Shown here in pieces: positions 6,176-62,062 of a DNA stretch of 64,000 nt. The DNA comes from Ostrea edulis (Eukaryota): the NCBI RefSeq assembly GCF_947568905.1, contig NC_079166.1, forward strand, positions 7,378,001 to 7,442,000, given 5' to 3'. Both the position numbers and the translations under genes were made by a program. Numbering within the stretch: position 1 is the first letter of the stretch; each line of letters opens with the position of its first letter. Below the pieces are notes generated by a model that made no database searches, had not been told where the DNA came from, and worked only from the letters and a program-made list of their open reading frames with translations.

Positions 6176-8713
6176 TCAACCGACTAATCCTCCTCCACCC
6201 ATAGCTAGTTCAATCCTGTCAAATAAATACATAAACAAATTATATCATTTTAAAAATTACTTTCAGGGTATATATGCATATTCATATGATCCAATATTCA
6301 CTCCATTTTTTATATGAAAAATATCTAGTGTATAATTAATTTCATAAAAGACCTTACTCTTTTTCACAGATAAAGCCATATTTCCGATCACAATAATCAT
6401 CGTTCCAGTGGTGGTTTAAATTCCCCGCTAACGTCAGGCAAGCTGCACCTGCACCATTGGCTGGTTCTCCAGGGGACCACCCTAAGAATGTCAATGGGCG
6501 CTGATTGCCAACCCATATCCAATTGCCATCTGAGAATGCATCCGTGGCGCCTAACCAGTATGTATCTGTTAATTAAACGTTTGTACTACAATTAAACGAT
6601 CCCGTTGACTCGTGTTATAAATACGTTTATTACTGGTTGTAATTGTCTAGTGGAAAAAGGCGCTTTCTTTACAACAGGAGGGGCCTATGTTCCATCACTA
6701 ACGGTGGAATAAAAATTAAGACAATCAAAATGGGTAGCACCTATTCCATCGCCAAGTAAATGACACGAGTCATCAGATGTCATTAAAGTTATATCTTTAA
6801 AAGAACCAAGGTCCTATGATACAGTAAGTATTTTGACGATGATGAACCCTCACTGCTCCAGCCTTGAGCACCATTATGATTTATCAGTTAATATTGTGTC
6901 ATTTCGACTGAATTTGGTGACTTATAATTATGAGTAGGATCAACATGAAATATTCTTGAGTGGGACATACAACAAACACATTCATATTTCCTACCGTGAT
7001 TTGTTCCTATGTGGTTTCGTAAGAAGTCATTTTCATCCTTTGTATCAACCTCCACCAGGAAAGAACTGAACCTCTCGCAGAATGCCTGTGTTGAACATGC
7101 AACTCTTTTAAATGCAATACCTAATTAAGGAATATATAATGGAAATAGTGTAAAAACGTGTGTTTGTGGTACGGCATGCGCCCCATTCATGACCAAGTCA
7201 ATTCTGGCAATACTTTGACAACTGCTACATGAATATGGGAAATAGACGGCGGAAAAGTTGAAGTTTTGAGAAAGAGAGGTCAAATTGCCAATAATGTACA
7301 ATTTCAACCACAATTCCGATATGAGCTAATTGCTTACCCCTGCTTCGATCCAGTCGGTTTTGATATCTTTAACAAATCCATAACACGAGCGCCCATGTAA
7401 GTACCATGAGTCAGGACATGGATTAAATGATGCCCCATGAACTGTTGCAGTGGCTGAAAGGACTAAAAAAGAATTCATGTCCTGAAGAGTGCAGACGTCT
7501 AAATTCCGGAATAATAACCTGACACAGAACTGCGAGTATTACACCTACAGTGTGTGTGTTATTTGGAAAACAAAATAAAAAGTTATTTCTAAATGTAATT
7601 GTGAAGATATAGAAAAGCTCGAAATGAAATATTGATTTACTATGCCACATGGGAAGCTTTGACCAATAGTTAACCGTAAATATAATTTGATATACTAATG
7701 CTCAAGAAATAAACTTCATTTTTCAAATATATCAGGGCATGAACTATGATGCTTCATGCCGGCGTACTCCATGAAAATTATGTTGGCGTGAAGCATTGCA
7801 GTTCATTCGCTTTTGCATGTTCAAAAGTAAAATTTGTTTCTTACATTTACATTTTACTTTCATTTTTATCAGCATGTCCAGCCGTGGAAATAGACAAATT
7901 GTTTTAGCTATATTTATAAGCGTTTTGTTTATAGGTACAGTGTATTAATAAAAAATGATTATCATTACAGTTTGTATTGAAAATGTGAGCATAAACAAGT
8001 GAAGATAAGGCAAATTGATCAATTTCATAAATCCTTAATTACATAGGGTCTATCTTTTATATTAAAAATGAAATCACAATATTTTGCAAGATGAACTCCA
8101 AAAAGCAGATGTATATTATTTATTATCAGTTATCTATAGCTGCAGCGCTTTGAAATTGAAGTGCTTTTGACGTTTTAGTCCTTTATAAAATGTTTGTCTG
8201 GAGGACAATATATTAAACCGGTACCTCGCTGATTCGTGGCTACACACAAGCATAAGAGATACGAAGTCAATAGGGTACCAGTTTAGGAAAATGTGAACAG
8301 GGAATTATTTTGCAATTAGTATTGTATCATATGTTTTTGTAAATATTCTGAAAAACTTTTTGTGATTTTCTTGTTATGATCTTTAATTTCACCACCTTTT
8401 TGGAACATGCAAAATTTTACCAATGTCTTAGACCCTAGGCCTTTAAAAGATACAAAATTAACACGGACACAACTGAGTATGTATTAGGTGCCCAGGAGAA
8501 GCAAGCTTACATGTATCATATCATATTAACAAGGATACCACAATATGATTTGTATGAGGTACGCGTGCTCTTTTGTCGTCGGTAAAACAGTAAGGACACA
8601 CACGGACCAATGTCGACCTCCAATAATTGTCTGTTGAACTTTATATCATATTTGCTTTCCTTAGAGCACCGTTGTAAAACATTCTTACCGAATAACGAAG
8701 TTACAATATCCAT
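6176..8713 (-). CDS. Secreted C-type lectin A (perlucin-like), 5 exons, 162 aa
   Basis: Exons 8713-8689, 7462-7338 (alternative acceptor 7453), 7085-6995, 6565-6358, 6215-6176; GT-AG throughout and phases consistent. Protein MDIVTSLFVLSATATVHGASFNPCPDSW...CYGF...YWLGATD...WSPGEPANGAGAACL...HWNDDYC...FICEKEIELAMGGGGLVG*: signal peptide, six Cys, WLG and WND motifs. Confidence 0.9.
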
Positions 8714-10164
8714 GGTGTTGAAAACTTGTGGTTGAATTCGCCTACTACTCAGCGATAGTACAACAGCCTTATCGTTCTAATTTTGACCTGAATTCACTGT
8801 TGTACGTGTAGCCAAAACATTCCATAGTGACCTGTAGATTAACAATAACTCTAATCAAAAATTCATAACATTGACAACGAATAAATGTAGTAAACGTAAA
8901 TAATTCCAATAAAGCTTTGATTTCTTATGAAACATGTAAGATGAATTTTGATATCATCATTATCCATATTGAACACTTTGATATTATAGGTACATACTCA
9001 GTGTTGTAAAAATTCCGATAGTTCATCACTTAGATTCATTGTGGATAAAATGTTGGTACTTTGACTTTTTCAGTGTTTGAGTAAACAATCTTTGAATAAA
9101 TTGAATACGTTTAATGATAGTTTTGATAACTTAATATCCTGAACTAATGGTTTCATAAATACTTCCCACAATACACAAATTAAAAACATCATTTTAGTCG
9201 AGACAAAATTTTCATATATATCGATATACCGTAGTAAAAACGTAGTCAATATATGTATCTATAATGGTAAATCATTTCATACTACATGTATAAGGACGAA
9301 TGGTAAAAACTTACTACGGTACAATAAATATAATTAATATCTAGAGTTACTTTTACTATGGATATAGTTTATTTAAATATTTTTGTTAGAAGATATCAAT
9401 TTATCAAGATTAGTAATGTAATCTTTTAGACATCGTGTTACGTGTACAGAGTGTACGGTTTTACAGATATAAACTCATCTGTCAATCGCTTTACATTAAA
9501 AGAGTTTGTGTACAATTAGTTGTCATTTAAGAAGTCTTCATAATAGTATGTCTTATGAGCCGGTTATGCTGTCTTTTTATGAAAACATTTCAATATTATG
9601 CGTCTTAATTATGGCGTCATAATGTACCCCAGTTTACTTTATTTTGCAATTATTGTAAAATATTTAATTTCTGATATTTTCATTGCATAACTGTTGTCTT
9701 GTACCTTGTACATAAATATTGTAATAAAAAATGCTACCGTTCTTGCACATTATATCCTACAAATATTATGTAAGCTTTTTCTGATGAAACCTTATGATCA
9801 TCGATTTGATCAAGCTTGTTTTCCCTGCAAGCTCCAAGATCCCATGGTCAGATTTGCTCTTCAAGATTGTTGAGATAATTTTAGAAATTATAAAGTTTCC
9901 ATACATAACCCATGTGCCTAATCTAATAAAATTAATGGCATTGTATTAATCAGAAGAGCTTTGTTGAAAAGCGTATAAATTCCCCATACCTTTATAAATA
10001 TACCAATTATCAGGCATTGTTCGTTCATTATCTGCCAAACATTTCGAAGAATATATGCACTTTGATATACATTTAGTGTTATAAACTGTATACCCATCCC
10101 CTTTTTTTACTTTAAAAAGGGGTTAAGAAAGACATCCATCTACGATTGATGATTTTAGAAAATG

Positions 10165-10281
10165 TAGGGGATGCTTACTCCTCCTTGGCACCTGATCCCA
10201 CCTTTGGTATATCCATGATCCGTGTTGGCCCAACTCTCTATTTTGTATTCCTTATGGGAGTTATGAGATTGATCACTGTTC
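10165..10281 (+). mobile_element. Naiad-type 3'-end fragment downstream of MTase1
   Basis: GGGGATGCTTACTCCTCC...GATTGATCACTG; shared with the duplicate at ~61193-61322, so it predates the duplication. Confidence 0.8.
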
Positions 10282-10382
10282 ATTTGTAATTTCTCTAATA
10301 AATTGCAAACATCAAAGCAGAAAAATTATAAATCAACATGGCTTTTAAACTTTGAAAGCACCTTACAAGTTACAAATACATG

Positions 10383-13300
10383 TCATTTCATTGAATTTTT
10401 AAACACCAATCTAGAATATTGAGGGTCAACGGAGTTATTATCAATATTAAGAATAGTAAAACCATGTTCCGTGATAAAATTTCGTCTATCTTCCACTCCC
10501 CAGCCAGCCCCATGTCCAACAGCTGGACTCTTTGACATACTGTTTGGTAAACAGAAGAACACGCTGAATGGTAGATGAATCTTTGCAGCTTTGCTTCCAA
10601 TATTTGTAGAAATGTCAGAGGATATATTGGGATCAAATGTTACAATACATCCATCAGGTTTGAGGACTGTTCTTAACTCTGATAAAACTTGCCCTGGATC
10701 TGGAAGATCGTGTAGAACTTCCATCAATATGATGACATCAAATCTAATATTCAAAGTCGAAGATATGTCCTTACTACTTGTAAAATGCAGATTCGGACAC
10801 TTGTATGTTTTCTGGCAGTGACGAATGGATTGTTCGTCAATATCCACACCAGTGATATTGAAATATTGATATGTTTCTGCAAGTTGCTGAGAGAGTTTGC
10901 CGTATCCACAACCAAAGTCTAAAATGTCCTTTATTTGTTCTGCCAAGTAAAACAGTTTATAGAAAACATGCAGTATCATTATTACGAGAGTCTACTGTTA
11001 TTCGTATAGGAGTTATGAGATTGATCACTGTTCGTTATCTTCACCTTGCATCAGCCTATTGACAAGTTTTCCTCTTGTAATGATTTAGAAACTTTCTTGA
11101 TAGTATGCACTATTCTAATATCATGCATTGAATTGACTTCGCATCTGTAGTTGATTAAATGTCCTTCGGGGCTAAGGTGTTTATCGGTGATGTGAAAAAA
11201 TCGAAATGAAATATAAGAAGGAGAAGATAACAGAATGAAGCATAATTTAAAAAAATACAAATTTTGAAAGGTATAATGACACCTGTAATATTTTGTGTTT
11301 TACCACGCATGCTTGTATCTTTTCGCAAAAGCAGAAACCGTGCGCTAACTGTTCACTTCTTACATTTACATGGGGAAATTTGGCCGAATTATGACGTCAA
11401 ATAGAACATACATACATTATACCTGGATATCAATTGATCATGTACTTTGGAACCCTTGCACTTTCATATGAAAATGATTTTGAAATTACTATATATAAAT
11501 ACGGGAGCATTCGTACCTTGTTCATGGGTAAAATGATGTTGTTCTATCAATTACATATTAACACGCTCTACATTATTTGACAAATCAGTGTTTGACGTTT
11601 GATTGGTGTCTTCTCGTAAGTACAACAGTAAATAGATGAGTGTTTGCCCAACTCTTTATTTTGAATTACTTATACTAGTATTCAGATTGATCAATGTTCG
11701 GTATCTTCACCTTTCATTTGATAAAGTTTTCGTTTAATCGTCGCCTTTCTGATGTTTTATTTTAATTGAAGATTAAGTTATTCACAGCAAAATGCATTTA
11801 TATGAAAGATTAAGATAACGAACAGTGATCAATCTCATAACTCCCACAAGCAATTCAAAATAGACAGTTGGGCAAACACGGACCGCTGGACACACTGGAA
11901 GTGGGTTCAGGTGTTTAGGATGGGTAAACACCCCCTTTCGACTGGTCGCATTCGTTTTCTGCGTAAACCTGGACAATTTTCATCGGACAAGTACTAGGAT
12001 ATTAATAACTAGTATCAAATATAGTGAGTTCAGGCACAGTTTAGCGCCAATTTTAAAAGTTGAGGAGTAGGTAACAAAGGGTATTAACTTACAACATTCT
12101 GAAAAAACAACCTTCAAACCAGAGAGATATATTTGTACCAGGAATGTGTCGTCTTTAGCCATCACTATTTTGTATACAAGAGTTGCCCAAGTGACGTTTA
12201 TTTTCGTAACTTCTTTTTCTGCAGAGTTCCAACATTTTCTAGTTCGATATCCCGTATTTCAAACGTATTTCTGTAGTTTTTCTTTGTTTCGGTATAATAA
12301 ACAATTTACTGAATTAAATGAATATTCGGGAGATACGTGTATGAGGATCTATTTACGTTGCCCTAGGGGAATATGATTTTTTGTGAATAGATCTTCACAT
12401 CTTTCCTACTGTCATGCAATAAATGTACATTTCATTTAATATATGTTTCTATTGGCCCATAATTTGGAATGTTGTAAAATCACAGACCTACATGTATATC
12501 ATCAGTTCCTGTCTTTTTTCGCACTCTCTTTCACATCTGTTATTGTGGCTCGAATGTTCTTTGAAACGCGATTTAGTGACGGTTTTCCTTTCGTCAGTAA
12601 TTTGTATAAGGCCATGTCAATTTGTAATCTAGTTCGTCGGATTCGCCGCTTCTATTTGTAACAAATCCAAATTATAATATTATCAAAAAATAATATCCGC
12701 CCGCGTGTTCAAAAATATCCTTAAATATTTTTTTTTAGTTTTTACAACAAGCGCACAAATAACCTTGATGTATATGGTGACAAATGAGAGAAGCGCGGGC
12801 CCTCGAGAAATTTCCTAACAGTGTAATACGGTTAGGTTATTCATGATGTATATCTTAATATGTACGATACTTCATAACACTGGATTGGAAGTTGTTCCTT
12901 ATGCTGGAATCGAACTGGAAGCCGATGAAACTTTTGAAGCGCTATTCGATGCCACTATTTAGAGAACATTGATAGCGTATGATTGATTGTTTGATTAGCC
13001 TATATATTGACTGAAGTCTCTCTTGAGAATATTTCACTCACATGAAGACGTTACCATTGCCGGTGAAGGTCTGCAAAATTTGGGCCTATGCTCAGCGCTT
13101 ATGGCACTGAGGGATTTTTATCGTGCCACACCTGCTGTGACAAGGATCTCAGTTTTTGAAGTCCTATCTGAAGGACCGCCCCATTTATTCGCCTCTTACA
13201 ACAAGCAAGGGGTACTGATCGATGACTATTTTAAACCGGACCGACAGTTAATGACAAATTCACAAAAGGTTTGGTGATGTCATATCAAAATTCAAGAAAA

Positions 13301-14895
13301 TGCTCAAAGCGATGCAATGGATATTGCATTTGCAATGAATGTCAAAACTGGATGTGTCCCTAGCAATATGCATATCTCTGAATCGAAAGTTTGTAGAAAT
13401 GAAACTTAAATAAACTTCATCAAAAAGACCTTATCAGTTAATGTTGCAAAGTACATGTATTAGGTATAAAGAAAATAAGTCTTTGAAACCTGAAATACTT
13501 CTTATTTATTGTAAACTATATCAACAAAGTTGAAGAATATCAAGTTTATGTGGTAAACAAATGGTATCTGAAGATTTTAGATCTTTATTTTTAGGCGCCC
13601 GCTTTTTAAAATCACACTTAATTCAATTAAAAATATTTATATTTCTTGTATTCGCTCGCCTTATAATTTTTATCTCCAAAATTAAAAATAATATTTCTAA
13701 AATAATTTCGCCCTCTCGCCTCACTTTTTTTGTTTGAAAATCCGAAGAACTATTTTACAAAATTGGTGTGGCCTAATACCAAATTCAATGCGAACTTTTC
13801 AATCTCAATTTTGGACACAATCTCTTTCAAATGCGCTTCAGAACAGATTAATCCCACCGCTCATAGAGAACTAAAATTTCTAACAAATATATATTCATCA
13901 TTATTAGTTACCTTGCGAATCTTTGAAATGTCTTTTGAAAACTGTTCCTAAATTACTTTCCACCCAATGACTGTTAAACGTGTTTACTTCATTGAACTTC
14001 CCGAGCCATTCCAAATCTTTTTGTGGAAAAGGGTAACCTGATTAAATTCCAAAATGAAAAAAAATTATGGAACAAACATATTTGGCATTTCATTCATACA
14101 TTTCTGAAAAAGGTGAATAGAACGTTAGATGCTTGTTGTCTCATTTTGCAATACCTACCAGTGTTATGTTCCTTGTCTCGCATTGCAGGCTCCAATTTTA
14201 GCAGACAATCTGCAAACATTGGTAATACGGCGGACATGAGAACAGCCCTTTGAACTTGTTCAGAGCAGGGAAGGCTATATTTTTCATTGTCGTATCGGAT
14301 GATCCCCTTCGTTGTCATGCAGATCAACCATTCCTGTACATATCTAATTCAAATGCGCATTTTTACATTTAAACACAGCTTTCTCGAATCACAACAATAA
14401 AGGTAAATAGGAAAGAATAATGATAGCTCCTTTATAAACTACCAAACCAAATTTCTTCAGGTCAACGGTCATAAAATCCGAGTGTAGTTAATCAACGTTT
14501 GTCTAATATATAGTTAGTAACAGATGACAGCTGTCATTCTTGAAATATATTCCATTTCACACTTTTAAAAAACTATAAATGCGTTCTCATTATGCCTGTT
14601 TAACTTCAAACTTTAAAGATTGATTTTAATTTTAAGATAAACGTATGAAACGGTGAATATTCTAATAATAAACTAAGATACTGCACCTCAGGTTTAATCC
14701 GGCTTCATCGCTGATCTCTCTGTCTGTACAAGGGGTTTCCAGTCTGTACAATGCATCAACAATGCCCACTCTATAACCTAGGGCTAGCACCATCGCATGT
14801 AGTCCGTCTGCCACTGTGTCTTCAATAATTTTCTCAACAGTGTCTACTCCGTCGGAGGTTTGCTTGTTCTTTTCGTCTTTTTCAGAATTCTCCAT
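10383..14895 (-). CDS. Class I SAM-dependent methyltransferase 1 (Rv2258c-like, N-terminal winged-helix-like region), 4 exons, 358 aa
   Basis: Exons 14895-14687, 14343-14159, 14037-13912, 10939-10383; GT-AG and in frame. Motifs: EISDEAGLNLRYVQEWL, LDFGCGYG (motif I), GVDID, FDVIILMEVLHDLPDP, LKPDG, FCLPNSMS..GHGAGWG. No signal peptide. Confidence 0.9.
11805..11970 (-). mobile_element. Naiad-type 3'-end fragment in MTase1 intron 3 (shorter + strand pieces at 11004-11052 and 11640-11715)
   Basis: Reverse complement of the CCGTGTTTGCCCAAC...GGAGTTATGAGATTGATCACTGTTCGTTATC tail. Confidence 0.75.
13030..13218 (-). mobile_element. SINE body and 3' fragment (Deu/Nin-domain-like)
   Basis: Reverse strand reads TCAGTACCCCTTGCTTGTTGTAAGAGG...GTCACAGCAGGTGTGGCACGATAAAATCCCTC; shares segments with 47424-47547 and resembles 42080-42925. 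Confidence 0.6.
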
Positions 14896-17800
14896 CTTTT
14901 ACTGGAGTTTTATGTTGTAATAATTCATTATATCCGGAACGATTTGCAGAAGAAAAAAAACAATACAACAGTCACTTGCCAGATATGAAGTACATGTTCA
15001 CATGTTGATGCCTTCCACGAGTGTGTAAGGTACCTTGAAATGCCTTTTTGTATTACTGACAAAACACATTGGTCACAAAAATTGAATTTAATAATCTTGG
15101 TGGATCTTCAAAACTGAATTAATACAATGTATCTGTATGTTATAGTTGATTATTATGCAAAACAGTTCAATGTCCAATTATCTTGGCTGTGCCACATAAC
15201 CTCTCAGAGTTCTAACAAGTTCACCTTCACAGGTTCATTGACTTCTACTTTGCATCACTACTAAAAAATGAAATTATTGTTTGCTATATTTCAAGAATAA
15301 TTATTAATCATCGTTACATACGAAATTCAGAGCTTCTTTGTCCTCTGTGAATGAATTTCCTACTGGGATCCATCTCACCCATCCGAATGAATAATATCCA
15401 GTGTGTAAAATTCATAATGGTGTGCATCCATTGACTGAATTCGAAAGGGAGTAAATGCAGCGTTTGACGAAACCGATTTGTTTGTTCGTATATGTTGTTT
15501 TTAGAACTAGATTTTAAGTAGTGAGCTTCAAGTTTGATTAAACACAAACCGCGTGATGTTGCATTTGGACAATGCAATCAATCAAACCTTGCTGTATTTA
15601 TCAAAACTCAGAGTTGCAATGACCGACAAAGCACATATACGATACCTGTTTAAGTCTTGGTCTTTAAACATCCTACATGTCTACTTTACATGCTTATTTA
15701 AAATTTTGAACTTCATCACCGATTTTTCCATATCCAAGTAATTATTAAATAGATTATGTTTGGAGACACTCTAAATTCAATATTTCCTGAAATTTTACTC
15801 TCATTTTACTTCATCTTACAAACAACACGTGGGCATATCCGTGTTTACAGTATTCTAATCTTCACAATGGGAACTTTTTTCTCAATTTACATCTCAATCA
15901 AACAGGTATGGAATGTAGAATGTGCTTCCATACCAAGATTTACTATAATTTACACCTCAAACGCACAGGAATAATCATAATTATTACAGTTAAACACCGA
16001 AACAATACCACCCAAATATTTACTACGACTGAGCTATCATGCTTTTCCCACACGTCAACCTATCATTAAGTGACACTTTATTATTTGGATAACATAGGAT
16101 GTCCTACTTATAAGCAACAGGTCGAACTTTAAATGATCACTGTCAGCTTTATATTGTTGAAAATGGAAAAGACATGTCATATAAAAAAATCCCTGTTTTC
16201 TATCCTTTAGCAAAAGAACCAGATGCCATTTTGATGTTGATATTTCAAGAAGGTGACATGGTTAGTGCACGCACTTTTCTTCCCTGGGGCCTTCCATGTG
16301 CTACAGACAAATATGTATACAAACAATCATTTGAAACAGAGTCGCAAAAGCATGAACACAAAAGTTGGTAGCAAACTTCCATCTATATCACTTAATTTAA
16401 TTAAATATCAGTAACAATCGCAAAATCAAAAGACATAATATATAGATATTGTATACCAGAAGAAAAAGAGGCATGTTTGAATAGTGATGTGGCAGTTGAT
16501 AATTGATTCCTCTACATTATTTTAAGAGTCTGGTGAGACTGAGAGATCATTATGTGTAGAGTTAGTACAGTATATAGAAAATCATCAGCAAAATACAGGG
16601 TAGCCCGCGTTCCTATATATACAATTCTAATGGTATAGACGTCCGACGTTGCTCCAAAATGTACAGCAGTGCAGTAATGTAGGAATATATTTTGATTATA
16701 CAACTGTATATCAAAACTTGCATTACTGGCAGATACATCTTAAGCTGTTCACTGTTTATATGAGATGCTCTTATTCATGCTAGTGGGTTCATTTACAACC
16801 CGTCATATATGCAGATTAGGGGCGATTTCAAGGTCACAATATACACTGTCATATCAAAATTACTTTCATGCATACTACATATAGGTATTAAAACTTGAGA
16901 CTTACATGACACCAAAGAGAAACAACATATAACCGTTTGACAAGGATGTTTACATGTATACATCTTACCACTTGATGCTGGTAATAAATGATGACAAAAT
17001 ATCATGATATTTTTCCTGCAATAATACTACACAACTGTATGTCTTCACGTACTTTTTTAATTGTGACAGTATGAAGTGCATTGTGGAACAAGGATGCACT
17101 GTGACGTTTCTGGGGGAAGTCTTATCTAAGGTGCGAAAGAACACTTCAAGACGACGTTTTACTGTTAAATTGAAACATTCCAGGTTTGTGCAAACGAAAC
17201 ATTCTTTCAGGGAAAATAATTGCATAATATCATCAACGACCTTAAGTATTGATCTTGAGAAATCTGCCATAGTGACATAATGAGAATAAATCAAAACGAA
17301 ACAATTAAGTAAAAATCAAACTAATAATTGTAAGTGTAAGACTTTAATGATTTTTATCGAGAAATCTAAGAATATATTTGCATGTAAAATAGATATCAGA
17401 AACATTTCATACTGCATGTACATATCTACTTAACAGTCATTTAATTTAATGCATGATTGCATGTTGGCAAGGTGTGATCTGTTTCTAAAATGATCTTCCA
17501 AGCATCAATTTAAAAAGAGATTACCAGAGTTATCAAATACCTGATCATGAATATGAAACTATTATCAAACAGAATAGCACTTTTTCGACAATGTAACGTA
17601 TATGAACTATACTAAGCACCATACCTCTTCTAAATACTAACCGTCTGTCCCATTTCTTCTGTAAAATGAGAGTCAATGAGGCAAACAAATACTATACTTC
17701 TTTTGTCAAAACTAATGAAAAACATCCGTTCTTCTAAGCAATTGGTAAAGGTAATGTTTTTGAACAATATCGGATAGTACCTGACTTAGATGCACGGACT

Positions 17801-17955
17801 TTTTCATGGTTAGTGAACACATGTTGTTTATTGAAGTGTTCGTACGCACGAGTTTTACTGGCCAATACTCTTTGGAGTAAGAAGTGTAAAAGGTTTGTTT
17901 GGACACTATTCGTTAGGGAAAACACTTAAGTTTTGACAAAATTTACCCTTCTGTC

Positions 17956-19161
17956 ATGCCACGACTCAGCTGAAACCAACAGAATCGTGCTGTTAGGATG
18001 CTTCAAGCTGGAATGGCACAGCATATCATATCAAGACACTTTGGAGTTCATCGGAACACCATCCAGTCATTATGGAGACGTTTCCAACAATCTGGTAACA
18101 CTCGGGATCGACCACGTCCTGAGCGTCCTGGTGTGACGTCGCGTAGACAGGACAACCACATTAGACTTGTGCAACTGAGAAATCGTTTCCAGACAGCAAG
18201 TTTGATTGCTTGTAGCATTCCTGGACTTCGACTAATCAGTCCAAGAACTGTGCGTAATCGTCTGCGCGAGCACAACATCAGACTAAAACGTCCAGCCCAA
18301 TACTGCTTCAACTCATCGTGTCGCTAGACTAGCGTGGTGCAGACGACATCTGCGATTCAAGGGCCCGTTTTACAAAACAACTTACGACAAAATCGCAAGT
18401 CTTAAATTGTATTACACTGTTATTACTTTGAGTGAATGAAGTAAAACTTTCTGAGGCTTAGTTTTCAATATTTAAAAAAATATTTTGCATTTGGAGTGAA
18501 TGATCTTACAATAAACTAGAAAATTCCAGTATGTAAAATTGGTCGTAAGTCGTAAGTTCTTTTGTAAAATGCGCCCCTGAATACAGGACTGGGCCAATAT
18601 TCTGTTCACTGATGAATCCAGATTTCATTTGGATTGCAGTGATGGCCATTGTAGAGTGTATTGTCGGGTTGTGGTGTGGCACCAGGACTCTTGTGTTATG
18701 CAACGTCGACAATTCGGTGGAGATAGCGTTATGGTGTGGGGTGGAATAACAGCACGTGGAAGGACCCCTCTACAATTTGTCAATGGAAATCTCACCGGCG
18801 TACGCTATCGAGACGAAATTATTCAGCGCCATGTGATACCCTTCATACAGAGACAGCAAAATCACACCACTCTGCAGCAAGACAACGCAAGGCTGCATGT
18901 TGCACGTGTAGTCAGGGACTTTTTTGTTCAAAAGAATGTCGATGTCTTGCCTTGGCCAGCTGTTCCCCCGATTTATCGCCGATCGAGGACGTCTGGAATG
19001 AAATGGAACAACGTCTACGCCAGACATTGGCTGATTTCGGCCAGGCTTTAACCAACATCTGGAACAACATCCCTCAAGCATTTCTGAACAATTTAGTGGC
19101 ATCAATGAGGCAATGTTGTCAGGAATGAGTGAATGCAAATGGTGGTCACACGCGTTATTAA
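17956..19161 (+). pseudogene. Tc1/mariner (DD34E) transposase, disrupted
   Basis: MPRLS*NQQNRAVRMLQAG...FGVHRNTIQSLWRRF (paired-like HTH), LFTDESRF, VMVWGGI, LQQDNA, WPA/CSPDLSPIE with 34 residues between D and E. Early stop, frameshifts and a 218-bp insertion. Confidence 0.93.
18360..18577. mobile_element. MITE (PIF/Harbinger-like) inserted in the Tc1 ORF
   Basis: TIRs GGGCCCGTTTTACAAAACAACTTACGAC / GTCGTAAGTTCTTTTGTAAAATGCGCCCC; flanks TCA/TGA (imperfect TNA-type TSD). Confidence 0.75.
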
Positions 19162-19456
19162 CTTTGTTAATTCAAGTTTGAATACCAGTGTCTTTCGAGT
19201 GTGCTGAAATTGACGTTATTCGACGTTAACATTATGGATTATGAAATGTTGTAACAAATACATTTGTTAACAGTATTACAAAAAATAAAATTTGTTCATT
19301 GTTATGTTTTATTATCTTTTCATATAGTAAATAATGCAGTTTCTTTTTTTTTACGCTAACTAGTATATATGCAGTTTAACACTTGATAGTAGTAATAAAT
19401 GACGACAAATTATTATATATTCCTTTCCCGCGATACGACTTATGTAGACACTTATA

Positions 19457-21801: not shown

Positions 21802-21805
21802 AATT

Positions 21806-29389: not shown

Positions 29390-29458
<69 letters not shown>

Positions 29459-53200: not shown

Positions 53201-56061
53201 AATTATTTTTTATTTCCTCTTCTGCGCGAGTGATATTTTAATAAAAGAAAATGGTGATTATCGATTTTTGTTTGAGCTATTTTATTATCAAATGCTAATA
53301 AACTTACTAATATTGTGTGTCCCTGCAGTTTGGGTGGTTGCATGATGTCTGATAATCAGCGTTTAGGCAATATATCATTGCAGCAATAAGCATTTGTACC
53401 CATCGCGTGTGGACGACAGTATGTTTTGCGTCTCACTGTGCGTAAGAGTTCCACAATGGGAAAGAACTATTGGGCAACTCGGAAATTGCGTATTACATGG
53501 ATTTATAAATCTATCAAACCTATCTTTAATTTTCCACTATTTGAACTCATCTGTAATTGAATTGGACATATATAATTTACTTGATGCAATTTGATGTTTA
53601 ATGAATTTGAGATTACATAATTAAAATTACATGTATCTTTAAATGAACTGAATTCATTTTTAATTACTTTTAATTATCTCCAATTATCTAAATATGAGTT
53701 TAAGTCATAAAAACAATGATCAAATATTACAAAATATAGAATATTTCAAAATTCGAAATTCTCAAATGTTTGACACACTAAATCAAATTACGAAAATGTT
53801 GAATTCCATTTAAAATGGGTCTATTTCAATGAAGATTTGGTATATTTCTAATCTAACTAGATCAATTCATATCTACTCGTATTTACCTATCTTTAATTCG
53901 TTTAGTGACATGTTCAATAATTAGAAGAGAGGCTTAATATCAAAGAATACCTTAATGAAATTTCACTACTGTTTCACTTACAATGTATAGGAGGCCCTCT
54001 TATACGGAGTCATCACATTTATGCAGTATTCATTCCAAAACTGTTACTTTCGTATAAAACAACAATTACAACAAACAACAAACACCCATAATAATTTTCA
54101 ATCAAGCCTTCAAAACTTCCAAATCCATTACATTGTTTCTACCTGTGTATGCACGGGTTTATGTGTTGTATTATGTGAAATTGTGCAGTCCATCCGATGT
54201 GGGAAAGTCGGTAACCGAAACCGTACTCTATGAAAAACATTGTCTTCTAACCAGGTATCTACCGTAAGTGCCACATAACCAATGAAATCGGCCGTTAAGT
54301 GCCACATAACCAATGAAATCGCCCGTTAGGTGCCACATAACCAATGAAATCGCCCGTTAAGTGCCACATAACCAATGAAATCGCTCACAAAGTGCCACAT
54401 AACCAATGAAATCGCCCGCCTAGTGTACAGTGATACATGTAGGAGGAGAAGCAGTTAATGATGACTACGATATCCAAATACAGCACTGTGACGAAAACAT
54501 GACATTTTCATTTATTAGATATATGTTTGCTAGTTTTGCAAAATACTGACTTTAAACGAGCCTGTTGAAACCCCTGAACCATTAACTTGTTTATCAGTAG
54601 CCTGTATCGATTTAAAAACTCTATGGTTTGCCCAACTAACTATTTTGTATTGCTTATTATTTGTCGAAATGCGCATCTGGTGCATCAAAATTGGTACCGT
54701 ATAAGTTTTACATTATAGGAGTTATGAGATTGATCATTCTTCGTTATCTTCGCCTTTCATATGTTGAGTAATATGTCATCTAGCCCCAAGACCATACACT
54801 GAGAATAGACTTAAGTCAACATTTTGATTACTTATATCTTAAGATTTATCTAGGAGTTATGAGATTGATCACTTGCATTTAACCATCGAGTTTGTATCTC
54901 TGCTGGTGGACAGTCTGTCCCCGAGGATACTTGTCGCTCGATATATGTTCCTTCATGAATATATAGGAGTTATGAGATTGATCACTGTTCGTTATCTTCA
55001 CCTTGCATCTAGCACAGATGTTTAAAAAACAGGTTTATAAAAAAAGAAATCAAATGCAAACATACACTAAAAAATTTAGATGTTAATGAAAATTCTTTCA
55101 AACGTTAGCTGGATTTGAGATTTAGACTTAAGATTATTATCAGTTTATGGTATTGAGGCCTGAACTTTGATGAGCAGATCGATGAATGCTCTATTCATAA
55201 AAGAAGGAAAGAAATCCGATACCTTGATTAACCGTTATCTTTAGTCATTGAAATAAACCATGTATGTGTAGTTTCCTATTTACAGAAGATATCCATATAA
55301 AACACATACAAACACATAATATCACACGTGCAATTACATCGTTATAACGACTATAGAATTACGAAATGCTGGCTTTAAACGAGCCTGTTGAAACTCCTGT
55401 ACCATCAACTTGTTTCTCAATAGCCTGCTTCGATTTCACAACTGATCATACGGAGACGAAACTCATGCGTATTGAATCAGTTGAGAAACACCATATATAT
55501 TTGAAGTTGACGATGGAGAAGCTGAAATACTCCCGTTTGTTATGAAGTTGAGTTGTTAGTTTCCCGTTAATATATATTTCTAATAAAATATCTTAGTATA
55601 AAGCAGAAGGGAACGACTCTGTGGTGTCTTTTATTTCGAGTTCACATGGATATATCTAATCGAAATATGAATGACAATTATTATTCTTAATTAATAGAGG
55701 TTTTGGTATAATATTTGCTTCATTATTCTTTTCTTCTAAGAGGAAACAAAATCCACCTATGGCCATTAGAATCCCTGATATATTTGGAGATTATATGGAA
55801 TGTTGCTAAAAACGTAACGATATTTTTATTTTGATTCAAACGAATTCTCCTCAGATCCATATTGGACTCACCTGAGACTATTTTTGTTCTACGACGGGTG
55901 AATCTTTGACATTTGGGACTTTATAGATTTATCTGTAGAATATTGTGTCACTTTGCTCACAAGTGAGATTTATTTCCGTAGGACTGACCATTACATTGAA
56001 AAAAGATTTGAAGATGATGATGGTAATAGAGAACATGTCATTTAATTCTTTAGTAAAATCA

Positions 56062-59000
56062 TCAACCGACTAATCCTCCTCCACCCATAGCTAGTTCAAT
56101 CCTGTCAAATAAATACATAAACAAATTATATCATTTTAAAAATTACTTTCAGGGTATATATGCATATTCATATGATCCAATATTCACTCCATTTTTTATA
56201 TGAAAAATATCTAGTGTATAATTAATTTCATAAAAGACCTTACTCTTTTTCACAGATAAAGCCATATTTCCGATCACAATAATCATCGTTCCAGTGGTGG
56301 TTTAAATTCCCCGCTAACGTCAGGCAAGCTGCACCTGCACCATTGGCTGGTTCTCCAGGGGACCACCCTAAGAATGTCATTGGGCGCTGATTGCCAACCC
56401 ATATCCAATTGCCATCTGAGAATGCATCCGTGGCGCCTAACCAGTATGTATCTGTTAATTAAACGTTTGTACTACAATTAAACGATCCCGTTGACTCGTG
56501 TTATAAATACGTTTATTACTGGTTGTAATTGTCTAGTGGAAAAAGGCGCTTTCTTTACAACAGGAGGGGCCTATGTTCCATCACTAACGGTGGAATAAAA
56601 ATTAAGACAATCAAAATGGGTAGCACCTATTCCATCGCCAAGTAAATGACACGAGTCATCAGATGTCATTAAAGTTATATCTTTAAAAGAATCAAGGTCC
56701 TATGATACAGTAAGTATTTTGACGATGATGAACCCTCACTGCTCCAGCCTTGAGCACCATTATGATTTATCAGTTAATATTGTGTCATTTCGACTGAATT
56801 TGGTGACTTATAATTATGAGTAGGATCAACATGAAATATTCTTGAGTGGGACATACAACAAACACATTCATATTTCCTACCGTGATTTGTTCCTATGTGG
56901 TTTCGTAAGAAGTCATTTTCATCCTTTGTATCAACCTCCACCAGGAAAGAACTGAACCTCTCGCAGAATGCCTGTGTTGAACATGCAACTCTTTTAAATG
57001 CAATACCTAATTAAGGAATATATAATGGAAATAGTGTAAAAACGTGTGTTTGTGGTACGGCATGCGCCCCGATCATGACCAAGTCAATTCTGGCAATACT
57101 TTGACAACTGCTATATGAATGTGGGAAATAGACGGCGGAAAAGTTGAAGTTTTGAGAAAGAGAGGTCAAATTGCCAATAATGTACAATTTCAACCACAAT
57201 TCCGATATGAGCTAATTGCTTACCCCTGCTTCGATCCAGTCGGTTTTGATATCTTTAACAAATCCATAACACGAGCGCCCATGTAAGTACCATGAGTCAG
57301 GACATGGATTAAATGATGCCCCATGAACTGTTGCAGTGGCTGAAAGGACTAAAAAAGAATTCATGTCCTGAAGAGTGCAGACGTCTAAATTCCGGAATAA
57401 TAACCTGACACAGAACTGCGAGTATTACACCTACAGTGTGTGTGTTATTTGGAAAACAAAATAAAAAGTTATTTCTAAATGTAATTGTGAAGATATAGAA
57501 AAGCTCGAAATGAAATATTGATTTACTATGCCACATGGGAAGCTTTGACCAATAGTTAACCGTAAATATAATTTGATATACTAATGCTCAAGAAATAAAC
57601 TTCATTTTTCAAATATATCAGGGCATGAACTATGATGCTTCATGCCGGCGTACTCCATGAAAATTATGTTGGCGTGAAGCATTGCAGTTCATTCGCTTTT
57701 GCATGTTCAAAAGTAAAATTTGTTTCTTACATTTACATTTTACTAAATTGTTTTAGCTATATTTATAAGCGTTTTGTTTATAGGTACAGTGTATTAATAA
57801 AAAATGATTATCATTACAGTTTGTATTGAAAATGTGAGCATAAACAAGTGAAGATAAGGCAAATTGATCAATTTCATAAATCCTTAATTACATAGGGTCT
57901 ATCTTTTATATTAAAAATGAAATCACAATATTTTGCAAGATGAACTCCAAAAAGCAAATGTATATTATTTATTATGAGTTATATATAGTTGCAGCGCTTT
58001 GAAATTGAAGTCCTTTTGACGTTTTAGTCCTTTATAAAATGTTTCTCTGGAGGACAATATATTAAACTGGTACCCCGCTGATTAGTGGCTACACACAAGC
58101 ATAGGACGCAGCTGTGTTAAGTAGGTCCATAGAAATATATCAGGAAAAAAAGCATTAATAAACAGATCAATTTGTGACAAATTCTGTAAACACAACCCTT
58201 TTATACAAAAACAATATGTATATATCATTAAGTGCATATTGACCTCTTATACATGTTTCACCAGACCGACAGTCTCAACATCAACTCTCTATCACGTGAT
58301 CAAATGTCAAGATAAAAACGTATCGTGTATGTATGAATCGTAGAATTGGCACGATATTCAGATATCAATGCAAGTTTAAGTTAATATAACTTCAAAGCAT
58401 ATTAATTTCTTAATTTGAAAAGTGCTGAGAGGAAACTTATTGTGCCTTGTAACATGTCTAATTTTTGCATTGAATATGCAAGATGCAGCGATTTTTGCAC
58501 ATACGAAGTTGAATCTAGCCTGAAAAACATATTTTCTGTTGAAGCCAGAACTTGCTCCCCTAACTTTCCTTTGGCACTGAAGTTCACATGTCACATAAAT
58601 GAAACATCTTTCACTTAAAAACCTCGGGGTGTCGTGCCAATGATGAAATTTTTATGTACGGAAACCCTGTTTATGCAAATGAGTCCATTGTTAAAGTAAC
58701 TATACGTGTAGATTAGGGGTGATATCAATATCACAATATAATATGGGTATTGCTTTAGCATGTATGCTATATAAAGATGAAATTGAAACTTTTTCAATAT
58801 CAAAGAGAATTAATATAACCCATTTGACAGAAACTTTTACGCGATTGCAGTTTACCGTTTGACAGCGGTGGTAAATAACGAAACAATATTTTGACATTTC
58901 CTACCACAAAAGGACTGTAGATATGTACGTCATGACCTTCGTCATGACGTAATTTTCATTGTGACGTCGTGCAATGTGCCAGTGCGGTAAAGTATATTTA

Positions 59001-59509
59001 TGTACAGCACTGGTATTAAAAATTTTATGGAAAAAGCCTTAACTCAACCGCGGAGATACGAAGTCAATAGGTACCAGTTTAGGAAAATGTGAACAGGGAA
59101 TTTTTTTGTAATTAGTATTGTATCATATGTTTTTGTAAATATTCTGAAAAACTTTTTGTGATTTTCTTGTTATGATCTTTAATTTCACCACCTTTTTGGA
59201 ACATGCAAAATTTTACCAATGTCTTAGACCCTACGCCTTTAAAAGATACAAAATTAACACGGACACAACTGAGTATGCATTAGGTGCCCAGGAGAAGCAA
59301 GCTTACATGTATCATATCATATTAACAAGGATACCACAATATGATTTGTATGAGGTACGCGTGCTCTTTTGTCGTCGGTAGAACAGTAAGGACACACACG
59401 GACCAATGTCGACCTCCAATAATTGTCTGCTGAACTTTATATCATATTTGCTTTCCTTAGAGCACCGTTGTAAAACATTCTTACCGAATAACGAAGTTAC
59501 AATATCCAT
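56062..59509 (-). CDS. Secreted C-type lectin A' (near-identical duplicate of lectin A)
   Basis: Exons 59509-59485, 57348-57224, 56971-56881, 56451-56244, 56101-56062. The only coding difference seen is TTG(Leu) to ATG(Met) at 56380 versus 6494. Confidence 0.9.
58104..59052. mobile_element. ~950-bp insertion in lectin A' intron 1, absent from lectin A
   Basis: Alignment break against ~8254; imperfect inverted ends CGCAGCTGTGTTAAG / CTTAACTCAACCGCG. Confidence 0.6.
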
Positions 59510-60088
59510 GGTGTTGAAAACTTGTGGTGCAATTCGCCTACTACTCAGCGATAGTACAACAGCCTTATCGTTCTAATTTTGACCTGAATTCACTGTTGTA
59601 CGTGTAGCCAAAACATTCCATAGTGACCTGTAGATTAGCAATATCTCTAATCAAAAATTTAAAACACTTACAACGAATAAATGTAGTAAACGTGAATTTA
59701 CTATTGTTTAATCTAATTCCAATACAGCTTTGATTTCCTATGAAATATTTAAGATCAATTTTGATATCATCGTTATCCATATTGAATACTTTGATAGTAT
59801 AGGTACGTACTCAATTCCGATAGTTCATCACTTGGATTCAATATGGATAATATGTTGGTTATTGACTTTTTCAGTATTTCAGTAAACAATTTTTGAATAG
59901 ATTAAATACGTTTAATGATAGTTTTAATAACTTAATATCCTAAATTAATGGTTTCGTAAACACTCCATACAATACACAAATTAAAAACATCATTTTAGTT
60001 GATCCAAAATTTTCATATATATCGATATACCGTAGTAAAAACAAAGTTAATATATGTATCTATAATGGTAAATTATTTGATACTACAT

Positions 60089-60304
60089 TTTAATTTTGAA
60101 TTAAGGATTATCTCCCTCATGCATAACTCTTATCCTTAGACGAATTTGACTCCACTTGGCACGCTGTTTTTTTTGGCTACAATAGCTCTAAAACTTCATT
60201 GTTATTTTGGATTTCAAACATTTCGGTTGAGCATCACTGAAGAGACATTATTTGTCGAAATGCGCATCTGGTGCATCAAAATTGGTACCGCGTAAGTTTT
60301 ACAT
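60089..60304 (+). mobile_element. Penelope-like pseudo-LTR insertion with hammerhead ribozyme (60231-60274), absent from copy 1
   Basis: Empty site at ~9280 reads CATACTACATGTATAAGG; the filled site has TACAT on both sides. Confidence 0.82.
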
Positions 60305-61504
60305 GTATAAGGACGTATGGTAAAAACTCACTACGGTCCATAATAATTGATATCTAGAGTTAGTTTTACTGTGGATATAACTTATTTCAATATTTTTGTT
60401 AGAGGATATCAATTTATCAAGTAACATAATCTTTTAGACTTCATGCAAGGTGAAGATAACGAACAATGATCAATCTCATAACTCCTATAAGCAATACAAA
60501 ATAGATATGCATTCGTTACTGTACAGAGTGCACCGTTTTACAGATTTAAACTCATCTCTCAATCACTTTATATTAAAACAGTTTATGTACAATTAGTTGT
60601 CATTTAACAAGTCTTCAGAATAGTATGTCTTATGAGCCGGTTATGCTGTCTTTTATGAACACATTTCAATATTATGCGTCTTAATTATGGCGTCATAATG
60701 TACCCCAGTTTACTTTATTTTGCAATTAATGTGATATATCTAATTTGTTATATTTTCATGGCATAACTGTTGTCTTGTTCATAGATATTGTAATAAAGAA
60801 TGGTATCGATCTTGCGCAATCAATCATACAAATATTATGTAAGCTTTTTCTGATCAAGTTTGTTTTCCCTGCAAGCTCCAAGATCGCATGGTCAGATTTG
60901 TTCTTAAAGATTGTTTAGATAATTTTAGAAATTATAAAGTTTCCATACATAACCCATGTGCCTAATCTAATAAAATTCATAGCATTGTATTAATCAGTAG
61001 AGCTTTGTTCCATACACGTTTATAGATATACCAATCATCAGGCATTGTCTGTCCATTATCTGCTAAACATTTCGAACAATAAATGCACTTTTATATACAT
61101 TTAGTGTTATAAACTGTATGCCTTTCCCCGTTTTTACTTTAAAAAGGCGTTTAAAAAGACATACATCTACGATTGGCGATTTTAGAAATTGTAGGGGATG
61201 TTTACTCCTCCTAGGCACCTGATCCCACCTTGGTATATCCAGGGTCCGTGTTTGCCCAATTCTCTATTTGTATTGCTTATGGGAATTATGAGATTGATCC
61301 CTGTTCGTTATCTTCACCTTTGATATAAAAGTTCACCAAATTATAAATTTGAGATGTAAACATTGCTTTCCGATAAAACTAAATGATAGTCTGTATTTTA
61401 TTTACATTCTTTACATTGGTAACTTTTCTAATCAATTAAAAGCAGAAAAATTATAAATCAACATGGCATTAAAAGATTGAAATCACTTTGCAAGAAACAA
61501 ATAT

Positions 61505-62062
61505 TTCTCATTACATTGATTTTTAAACACCAATCTAGAATATTGAGGGTCAAAGGAATTATTATCAATATCAAGAATAGTAAAACCATGTTCTGTGATA
61601 AAATTTCGTCGATCTTCAACTCCCCAGCCAGCCCCATATCCAACAGCTGGACTCTTTGACATACTGTTTGGTAAACAGAAGAACACGCTGAATGGTAAAT
61701 GAATCTTTGCAGCTTTGCTTCCAATATTTGTCGAAATGTCAGAGGATATATTGCGATCAAATGTTACAATATATCCATCAGGTTTGAGGACTGTTCTTAA
61801 CTCTGATAAAACTTGCCCTGGATCTGGAAGATCGTGTAGAACTTTCATCAATATGATGACATCAAATCTATATTCAAAATCGAAGATATGTCTTTACTAC
61901 TTGTAAAATGAATGTTTGGACACTTGTATGTTTTCTGGCAGTGACGAATGGATTGTTTGTCGATATCCACACCAGTGATATTGAAATCTTGATATATTTC
62001 TGCAGGTTGCTAACAGAGTCTTCCGTATCTACAACCAAAGTCTAAAATGTCCTTTATTTGTT
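61505..62062 (-). pseudogene. Methyltransferase 3 last exon, disrupted copy of MTase1 exon 4
   Basis: Acceptor retained; motif I changed to GCRYG; TAG stop at 62010-62012; 1-bp deletion before the FDVII region; further frameshift near the end. Confidence 0.9.

What the first reader, a model, noticed from the sequence alone, without database searches (positions are those of the whole stretch)
6176..62062. Repeated co-oriented methyltransferase plus secreted C-type lectin module (three units)
Seen: each methyltransferase (or its last exon) is followed on the same strand by a lectin start codon, at 1670 bp (10383 to 8713), 2066 bp (45466 to 43400) and ~2.0 kb (61505 to 59509). Units 1 and 2 are old paralogs: by eye the MTases are about half identical, the lectins less so, and the spacers do not align, yet order, strand, spacing and exon phases are kept. 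Known: Rv2258c-like class I MTases are cytosolic enzymes of poorly defined substrate; perlucin-like CTLs act in mollusc immunity and shell formation; molluscs carry O-methylated glycans. Inference: this may be an undescribed functional pair (co-regulated defence, or methylation plus recognition) rather than chance neighbours. Passive co-duplication is the null hypothesis.
Basis: partly seen in the sequence, partly recalled or inferred. Interest (0 to 1): 0.85.

Follow-up and report, generated by a model that had tools for sequence, protein, structure and literature searches.

The report
Oyster methyltransferase–lectin gene pair, co-duplicated
In the flat oyster a cytosolic methyltransferase gene and a secreted C-type lectin gene sit head-to-tail as a block that was copied once in the oyster ancestor and again recently, but nothing yet shows that the two genes work together rather than simply travelling together.

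Summary
The window is Ostrea edulis OX387706.1, about 7.378–7.442 Mb. The coordinates are right. Two intact co-oriented pairs exist: MTase1 (14895–10383) followed by CTL1 (8713–6176), and MTase2 (49712–45466) followed by CTL2 (43400–37517). Exon phases are identical in both pairs. Protein identity is 55% for the MTases and 39% for the lectins.

"Unit 3" is not an independent unit. It belongs to a recent segmental duplication of at least 21 kb (86–99.6% identity to unit 1). Its MTase part is an exon-4 relic with one nonsense codon and two 1-bp deletions. The intact MTase of that copy lies outside the window, 12.3 kb upstream of CTL3, with a C1q gene between them.

Both pair types are also found in Saccostrea echinata and S. 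cucullata, in the same order and on the same strand. The MTase tree places the block duplication in the ostreid ancestor. Mytilus homologues, an older O. edulis paralogue and one further species have no lectin within 10 kb. The adjacency therefore arose once.

The spacers share only a dispersed repeat. One annotated S. echinata isoform fuses MTase exons 1–2 to the lectin, which hints at read-through transcription.

Passive co-duplication plus conserved linkage remains the best reading. Functional coupling is neither shown nor excluded.

The parts
10383..14895 (-). MTase1. An Rv2258c-like class I SAM methyltransferase of 358 aa (P0178, XP_048771390.2). Exons: 14895-14687, 14343-14159, 14037-13912, 10939-10383.
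   Evidence: An exact splice model that reproduces P0178 comes. Pfam finds WHD_Rv2258c plus Methyltransf domains. The PDB match to 5F8C has E=1.3e-26.
8714..10382 (-). Spacer 1 (1669 bp, 30% GC) between the MTase1 stop codon and the CTL1 start codon. It holds a dispersed repeat at 10166-10284.
   Evidence: The only similarity to spacer 2 is the repeat. No block is conserved with Saccostrea above shuffled controls.
6176..8713 (-). CTL1. A secreted single-domain C-type lectin of 162 aa. Exons: 8713-8689 (signal-peptide mini-exon), 7462-7338, 7085-6995, 6565-6358, 6215-6176 (Gly-rich tail). It carries an EPA motif (not EPN) and a WND motif.
   Evidence: The annotated range, length and Lectin_C hit come. 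The splice model with GT/AG sites that gives 162 aa comes.
45466..49712 (-). MTase2. The type-2 paralogue, 345 aa (P0180, XP_056015832.1). Exons: 49712-49543, 48084-47900, 46792-46667, 46022-45466.
   Evidence: It is 55% identical to MTase1.
43401..45465 (-). Spacer 2 (2065 bp) between the MTase2 stop codon and the CTL2 start codon. A copy of the same dispersed repeat lies at 44980-45087.
37517..43400 (-). CTL2. The type-2 C-type lectin, 168 aa. Exons: 43400-43373, 41932-41823, 40857-40764, 39378-39138, 37550-37517. It carries the canonical EPN and WND motifs.
   Evidence: The annotated range comes and the splice model. EPN and WND align to a solved mosquito C-type lectin.
61486..62074 (-). 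Pseudo-MTase3. A relic of exon 4 only. It has a nonsense codon at 62012-62010, 1-bp deletions near 61870 and 61519, the SAM motif changed from GCGYG to GCRYG, and the original stop codon lost. It is not annotated.
   Evidence: No exons 1-3 lie upstream. Nothing is called there.
56062..59509 (-). CTL3. A recent copy of CTL1 (162 aa, one amino-acid difference, dS = 0).
1340..22739 (.). Copy I of a recent segmental duplication. Its partner is 51225-62074 inside the window, continuing outside to window-equivalent 70401-83870. Copy II carries an extra 8.3 kb segment (62074-70401) that holds a C1q gene.
   Evidence: Self-blastn and blastn of L005 against the window. Identity is 99.57% over 1340-7858, 86-97.5% over 7896-10951 and 96-98% over 9607-22739.
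51225..62074 (.). Copy II of the segmental duplication (the part that lies inside the window).
21664..21801 (.). Assembly gap. It lies between unit 1 and unit 2 and is not in any exon of the module.
   Evidence: run of N. One search shows both flanks collinear with the paralogous copy. The letters were not read.

Best explanation
An Rv2258c-like cytosolic methyltransferase gene and a secreted perlucin-type C-type lectin gene became co-oriented neighbours once. This happened after the oyster-mussel split. The two-gene block was duplicated as a whole in the ostreid ancestor, giving type 1 and type 2. It has stayed linked since then in Ostrea and Saccostrea. In O. edulis the region was duplicated again recently, as a segment of at least 21 kb. 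Local breakage during that event left an exon-4 relic next to CTL3. The two genes are most likely separate transcription units. The repeated pattern reflects block duplication and slow rearrangement inside a birth-and-death immune-gene cluster, not a demonstrated joint function. What is shown: the gene models, the duplication structure, the relic, the orthology and the synteny. What is inferred: independent transcription and the absence of functional coupling.
For: Units 1 and 3 belong to one recent duplication. The unit-3 MTase is a broken exon-4 relic.

The MTase tree shows a type-1 clade and a type-2 clade. Each contains Ostrea, Saccostrea and Crassostrea, and together they are sister to Mytilus.

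Type-1 MTases sit beside type-1 lectins and type-2 beside type-2 in Saccostrea as well, so the block was copied as a unit.

No lectin lies within 10 kb of the homologues in M. coruscus, M. edulis and GCA_033119305.1, or of the older O. edulis paralogue. This holds both in the annotation and in an HMM search of six-frame translations.

The spacers share only a dispersed repeat and show no conserved block with Saccostrea above shuffled controls.

Spacing is not kept. It is 7.6 kb to the first recognisable lectin exon in S. cucullata and more than 10 kb in S. echinata type 2.

In copy II an 8.3 kb insertion with a C1q gene separates the intact MTase4 from CTL3, and both ORFs are still intact.

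S. cucullata has lectin genes on both sides of the MTase, so the MTases are embedded in a lectin array.

Tandem duplication is the documented route of immune-gene expansion in oysters (PMC4346834).
Against: Both genes of both paralogous blocks have been kept intact and linked, in the same order and on the same strand, across lineages whose synonymous sites are saturated (dS about 1.8). Independent gene loss or rearrangement could easily have undone this.

The distance from the MTase 3' end to the lectin start codon is about 1.7-2.1 kb in three O. edulis units. It is probably also about 2.06 kb after the MTase relic in S. echinata.

S. echinata has an annotated chimeric isoform (P0185) that joins MTase exons 1-2 in frame to the lectin's leader and its whole coding region. 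Its type-1 lectin model starts 642 bp after the MTase stop codon. Both hint at transcription running from the MTase into the lectin.

No expression data could be examined.
Confidence: 0.65

Rival explanations
1. Regulatory coupling. The MTase and the lectin share a regulatory domain, or form a conjoined (read-through) transcription unit. They are therefore co-expressed, for example in defence, and selection keeps them adjacent and co-oriented.
For: Order and strand are conserved in both paralogous units in Ostrea and Saccostrea. The stop-to-start distance is similar, about 1.7-2.1 kb, in several units. S. echinata has the annotated chimera P0185, made of MTase exons 1-2, the lectin leader and the full lectin. 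The S. echinata type-1 lectin model begins 642 bp after the MTase stop codon. Both genes were co-retained after the block duplication.
Against: No conserved non-coding block is found in the spacers. The spacing is not kept in the Saccostrea type-2 units. The recent O. edulis copy tolerates an 8.3 kb insertion with another gene between the MTase and the lectin. The chimera is a single computed gene model in one species; its product would bury the signal peptide internally, which is typical of read-through noise. The adjacency has a single evolutionary origin.
Confidence: 0.2
2. Biochemical coupling. The MTase makes a methylated ligand, such as O-methylated sugars on glycans, that the neighbouring lectin recognises or must avoid.
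For: This rests only on context. Molluscs carry O-methylated glycans (general knowledge, not tested here). The substrate of the Rv2258c family is undefined (one search shows only structural entries). CTL1 has a non-canonical EPA motif where CTL2 has EPN.
Against: By eye the MTase has an acidic, hydrophilic N-terminus followed by a winged-helix dimerisation domain. No signal peptide or membrane anchor is visible. This suggests a cytosolic enzyme, whereas glycan methylation takes place in the secretory pathway. Its nearest solved relatives are small-molecule methyltransferases, Rv2258c and TnmJ. Mussel homologues and the older oyster paralogue have no lectin partner.
Confidence: 0.04
3. Units 1 and 3 are not two loci. 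They would be two haplotypes of one locus placed in tandem by the assembler, that is, a false duplication next to a gap.
For: Identity is 99.57% over 6.5 kb, and CTL1 and CTL3 have dS = 0. An assembly gap lies inside copy I. Oysters are highly heterozygous (general knowledge).
Against: About 28 kb of unique sequence, including unit 2, separates the copies. Other parts differ by 2-14% and by an 8.3 kb insertion and a relic exon. MTase1 and MTase4 differ at dS 0.06 with dN/dS 0.24. Both flanks of the gap are collinear with the other copy. The public annotation lists further near-identical family members, P0179 and a second accession for P0162, which suggests a true multi-copy array.
Confidence: 0.1

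Closest known systems
Rv2258c of Mycobacterium tuberculosis (PDB 5F8C/5F8E/5F8F), a class I SAM-dependent methyltransferase with an N-terminal winged-helix domain
   Same: The domain order is the same: WHD_Rv2258c (PF21320) followed by a class I methyltransferase domain. The match is full-length (residues 31-339 against 39-353, E=1.3e-26). Motif I, DFGCGYG, is intact in MTase1 and MTase2.
   Different: These are animal genes with three introns, and they are under purifying selection (dN/dS 0.10-0.24). The substrate is unknown in both the bacterial and the oyster proteins. In oysters the gene sits next to a lectin gene.
Perlucin-type or CD209-like secreted single-domain C-type lectins of molluscs. 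The closest solved relative by sequence is mosquito mosGCTL-1 (PDB 9T9Z).
   Same: There is one Lectin_C domain behind a short hydrophobic N-terminal leader read by eye as a signal peptide. CTL2 carries EPN and WND in the aligned positions.
   Different: CTL1 and CTL3 carry EPA in place of EPN. All copies end in a separate, conserved Gly-rich mini-exon (sequence ending in VG). The signal peptide is split by a phase-1 intron.
Tandem birth-and-death clusters of innate-immunity genes in oysters (Zhang et al. 2015, PMC4346834)
   Same: The features match: local block duplication, relic fragments, near-identical recent copies, and lectin and C1q genes interleaved.
   Different: Here a non-immune-type enzyme gene is carried along in each repeat, and it has stayed intact in both old paralogous blocks.
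Conjoined (read-through) genes of animals
   Same: The neighbours are co-oriented and about 2 kb apart. One annotated isoform in S. echinata splices exon 2 of the upstream gene to the leader of the downstream gene.
   Different: No transcript evidence is available for O. edulis. The chimera is a single computed model, and in that species the lectin lies more than 10 kb downstream.

Membership tests
Rv2258c-like class I SAM methyltransferase | N-terminal winged-helix domain (PF21320) followed by a class I methyltransferase domain | tested here: met
   Pfam families are listed for P0178 and P0180. Methyltransf_31/12/11/25 hit exon 4.
Rv2258c-like class I SAM methyltransferase | Glycine-rich SAM-binding motif I | tested here: met
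   DFGCGYG is present in MTase1 and MTase2. In the unit-3 relic it is changed to GCRYG.
Rv2258c-like class I SAM methyltransferase | Full-length sequence similarity to the solved Rv2258c protein | tested here: met
   5F8C matches with E=1.3e-26, residues 31-339 against 39-353.
Rv2258c-like class I SAM methyltransferase | Methyl transfer to a defined substrate | not testable with these tools
   This needs an enzyme assay.
C-type lectin (Lectin_C, PF00059) | Lectin_C domain with the conserved cysteines and a WND motif | tested here: met
   Lectin_C hits the three annotated products. The models are and the alignment to solved lectins.
C-type lectin (Lectin_C, PF00059) | Canonical sugar and Ca2+ tripeptide (EPN or QPD) | tested here: inconclusive
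   CTL2 has EPN aligned to the EPN of mosGCTL-1. CTL1 and CTL3 have EPA, so binding may be altered.
C-type lectin (Lectin_C, PF00059) | Secretion signal | tested here: inconclusive
   Hydrophobic N-termini of 18 residues in all three models were read by eye. No signal-peptide predictor was available.
Functionally coupled gene pair (co-regulated module) | Adjacency, order and strand conserved across species | tested here: met
   The feature is met within Ostreidae: S. echinata type 1 and S. cucullata type 2. It is absent in Mytilus and in GCA_033119305.1.
Functionally coupled gene pair (co-regulated module) | The adjacency arose or was kept independently more than once | tested here: not met
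   There was a single origin followed by block duplication (tree). The older paralogue has Ig and TPR neighbours.
Functionally coupled gene pair (co-regulated module) | Conserved non-coding element between the genes | tested here: not met
   Only a dispersed repeat is shared. The best matches to the Saccostrea spacers score 27-37 bits, against 27-31 bits for the best shuffled matches.
Functionally coupled gene pair (co-regulated module) | Correlated expression | not testable with these tools
   No expression data are available. No paper names these loci.
Conjoined (read-through) gene | A transcript that joins exons of both genes | tested here: inconclusive
   One annotated S. echinata isoform (P0185) joins MTase exons 1-2 to the lectin. 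Its read support could not be checked, and none is known for O. edulis.

The most novel reading that the evidence does not exclude
In true oysters the Rv2258c-like methyltransferase and the downstream C-type lectin would form one conserved transcription unit, or at least a tightly co-regulated one. Transcription from the MTase promoter would run into the lectin, as the S. echinata chimeric model suggests. Selection for this arrangement would explain why both paralogous blocks have kept gene order, strand and a stop-to-start distance of about 2 kb since the ostreid ancestor.
Probability: 0.12. Interest if true: 0.6.

Novelty: new member of a known kind. Interest (0 to 1): 0.3.

Why it matters
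If the linkage is only passive, this is an ordinary example of block duplication in an oyster immune-gene cluster. Its value is then mainly for annotation. It identifies a relic exon, a recent segmental duplication that could be mistaken for independent units, and a probably mis-set lectin start codon in S. echinata.

If the pair proved to be co-regulated or co-transcribed, two things would follow. It would give a first functional context to an animal branch of the Rv2258c methyltransferase family, whose substrate is unknown. It would also be a conserved enzyme-plus-lectin module in mollusc defence or shell biology. Public RNA-seq data could test this directly.

Tried and rejected
- I first modelled CTL1 with an in-exon start codon at 7478 and a stop codon at 6354. 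I dropped this model once the annotated range and length, and the parallel with CTL2, showed an upstream phase-1 signal-peptide mini-exon at 8713 and a terminal mini-exon ending at 6176.
- I looked for MTase exons 1-3 upstream of the unit-3 relic and found none, inside the window or in the 9.7 kb beyond it.
- I looked for extra lectin or MTase relics elsewhere in the window and found none.
- I looked for conserved non-coding blocks in the spacers, within and between species, and found none above shuffled controls (an earlier attempt, timed out).
- Poly(A) and TATA motif scans of the spacers were uninformative in this AT-rich DNA.
- Literature searches for Rv2258c in oysters, for the gene identifiers, and for methylated-glycan lectin/methyltransferase links found nothing on this pair.
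- The Bonamia-resilience region paper uses another assembly and could not be tied to this locus.
- The context of the Crassostrea virginica orthologues could not be retrieved, because no contig is on record.
- The S. cucullata isoform P0003 was not on record.
- The location of the second O. edulis type-2 copy (P0179) was not looked up, because the look-ups were exhausted.

Full report
**Origin of the window.** The last 2186 bases of the window (61815-64000) are identical to the end of locus L005. L005 was fetched from Ostrea edulis GCA_947568905.1, record OX387706.1. The record ranges of L007 and L008 place the window at about 7,378,001-7,442,000 of that record. G+C content is 30-39% throughout, with no long prokaryote-type ORFs.

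**Gene models.** I used a Saccostrea echinata homologue (P0013) for tblastn. I then used the exact O. edulis proteins P0178 and P0180 to derive splice models that reproduce the annotated proteins.
- MTase1: exons 14895-14687, 14343-14159, 14037-13912, 10939-10383.
- MTase2: exons 49712-49543, 48084-47900, 46792-46667, 46022-45466.
- Exon lengths are 209 or 170, then 185, 126 and 557 nt, so the intron phases are identical.
- The public CDS ranges give lectins of 162 aa (8713-6176), 168 aa (43400-37517) and 162 aa (59509-56062), each with a Lectin_C hit.
- GT/AG models of five coding exons reproduce these lengths, with phases 1, 0, 1, 2 in all three.
- My first CTL1 model, with a start codon at 7478, was wrong.
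- In each lectin a 25-28 nt first exon encodes the start of an apparent signal peptide (judged by eye), and a last mini-exon encodes a Gly-rich tail that ends in VG.

**The observation.** The distances from stop to start codon (1670, 2066 and about 2000 bp), the common strand and the conserved phases are confirmed. MTase1 and MTase2 are 55% identical. CTL1 and CTL2 are 39% identical. The spacers share only a 109-bp copy of a dispersed repeat that occurs about ten times in the window.

**Unit 3 is not an independent unit.**
- Self-comparison shows 1340-7858 = 51225-57744 at 99.57%, 7896-8254 = 57745-58103 at 97.5%, 8256-9287 = 59053-60088 at 92.4%, 9437-10281 = 60515-61306 at 85.9%, and 10314-10951 = 61439-62074 at 93.3%.
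- L005 extends 21 kb past the right end of the window. Window-equivalent 70401-83870 duplicates window 9607-22739 at 96-98%. This stretch includes a fourth, intact methyltransferase, MTase4 (P0162, 357 aa, window-equivalent 75136-71815).
- Copy II therefore reads: MTase4, then an extra 8.3 kb with a co-oriented C1q gene (window-equivalent 65917-64689), then a second copy of part of the spacer plus exon 4, then CTL3.
- That second exon 4 (62074-61486) has a nonsense codon at 62012-62010, 1-bp deletions near 61870 and 61519, and GCGYG changed to GCRYG. No exons 1-3 precede it. It is a relic.
- CTL3 differs from CTL1 by one residue, with dS = 0. MTase1 and MTase4 differ at dS 0.06 with dN/dS 0.24.
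- The uneven identity suggests gene conversion or a layered history. A haplotype placed in tandem cannot be fully excluded.

**The assembly gap.** The run of N at 21664-21801 lies 6.8 kb upstream of the MTase1 start codon and outside every exon of the module. Its flanks (17240-21663 and 21802-22739) align in the same order and orientation to copy II, about 100 bp apart. This supports the join. I did not read or use the letters at the corresponding place.

**What the proteins are.**
- The methyltransferases carry WHD_Rv2258c plus class I methyltransferase domains. They match Rv2258c (5F8C) over their full length at E=1.3e-26, followed by the small-molecule enzyme TnmJ.
- Their N-termini are acidic and hydrophilic, with no signal peptide visible by eye.
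- They are under purifying selection (dN/dS 0.10-0.24).
- The lectins are single-domain C-type lectins. CTL2 has EPN and WND aligned to a solved mosquito lectin. CTL1 and CTL3 have EPA.

**Other species.**
- In S. echinata the type-1 orthologue P0013 is followed, on the same strand, by a decayed MTase relic (L002 16453-17448). After that comes the first body exon of a CTL1-type lectin at 20142.
- The annotated start of that lectin lies 642 bp after the MTase stop codon. A more convincing signal-peptide mini-exon lies at L002 19507-19534, about 2.06 kb after the relic.
- In S. cucullata the type-2 orthologue P0167 has a CTL2-type lectin (81% identical in exon 3) 7.6 kb downstream. It also has another lectin upstream and a third starting further downstream.
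- In S. echinata the type-2 MTase P0168 lies about 50 kb from the type-1 gene on the same scaffold. Its lectin starts more than 10 kb downstream.
- An annotated isoform there (P0185, 301 aa) joins MTase exons 1-2 in frame to 17 codons of lectin leader and then to the whole lectin.

**Age of the duplication.** A maximum-likelihood tree of 25 homologues gives a type-1 clade and a type-2 clade. Each contains Ostrea, Saccostrea and Crassostrea, and the two together are sister to Mytilus (99/97 support). The block was therefore duplicated in the ostreid ancestor.

**Outside that clade the pairing is absent.** M. coruscus has two MTase genes in tandem and no lectin. M. edulis has none. GCA_033119305.1 has a sugar-transporter fragment as neighbour. 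The older O. edulis paralogue on another chromosome has Ig and TPR neighbours. A profile built from lectin exon 3 found no hidden lectin exon in any of these loci.

**Reading.**
- The repeated pattern rests on one ancestral adjacency that was copied as a block and then retained. That is what passive co-duplication predicts, and oyster immune genes are known to expand in this way (PMC4346834).
- Further points for the passive reading: no conserved spacer element, variable spacing in Saccostrea, an insertion tolerated in copy II, and lectins on both sides of the MTase in S. cucullata.
- Points that keep a regulatory link alive: both genes were co-retained in both old blocks across lineages with saturated synonymous divergence; the stop-to-start distance of about 2 kb recurs; and the S. 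echinata gene models suggest read-through.
- A direct biochemical link (methylated ligand plus its lectin) is unlikely for an enzyme that appears cytosolic and is of the small-molecule type.

**Verdict.** There are two old pairs plus one recent partial copy. The functional interpretation is untested, and the null hypothesis is preferred at about 0.65. Interest is modest.

Noticed in passing
Just beyond the right end of the window (L005 10001-13322 and 19220-20448; window-equivalent 75136-71815 and 65917-64689): A fourth, intact type-1 methyltransferase lies here (P0162, 97% identical to MTase1), with a co-oriented C1q-domain gene between it and the exon-4 relic. The array therefore continues outside the window.
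   Followed up: partly
window 1340-7858 versus 51225-57744: This 6.5 kb tract covers the CTL1/CTL3 gene bodies and 4.8 kb downstream of them. It is 99.57% identical between the copies, while the adjoining duplicated DNA is only 86-98% identical. This suggests recent gene conversion, a layered duplication, or haplotype mis-assembly.
   Followed up: partly
window 2508-2786, 10166-10284, 11802-11950, 38097-38376, 44900-45118, 47589-47856, 52394-52672, 61193-61320, 62870-63014, 63762-64000: A dispersed repeat family of about 120-280 bp (78-91% identity, both orientations) is also present in the Saccostrea loci. Copies sit in both MTase-lectin spacers, and they are the only similarity between the spacers.
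   Followed up: partly
window 6215-6176, 37550-37517, 56101-56062: All three lectins end in a separate short exon that encodes a Gly-rich tail ending in VG. The tail is conserved between the two old lectin types and in the S. echinata protein P0185. Its function is unknown.
   Followed up: no
L002 13944 and L002 19507-19534 (Saccostrea echinata): The annotated start codon of the type-1 lectin (peptide MTFED..., 642 bp after the MTase stop codon) does not give a signal peptide. A phase-1 mini-exon at 19507 gives a hydrophobic leader. The public model may be built on a read-through transcript, or it may be mis-set.
   Followed up: partly
L002 16453-17448 (Saccostrea echinata): A decayed methyltransferase relic (exons 3-4, with stops and frameshifts) lies between the intact type-1 MTase and the lectin. 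It parallels the O. edulis exon-4 relic but is much more diverged, so it is probably an independent event.
   Followed up: partly
window 22739-22742: Similarity between the two copies of the segmental duplication ends at 22739. That is within 3 bp of the 22742 end of the gene another finding calls a transposase. An annotated 206-aa product without Pfam hits occupies 24262-22742.
   Followed up: no
window 1441-1671 and 4376-4532 (also 51326-51556 and 54262-54415): Short tandem repeats, with periods of about 56 bp and about 30 bp, lie in the duplicated DNA downstream of the lectin.
   Followed up: no
L001 (Mytilus coruscus): Two Rv2258c-like methyltransferase genes lie in tandem. The second has an in-frame stop in its last exon in the tblastn alignment, so the family also duplicates locally in mussels, without any lectin.
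   Followed up: no
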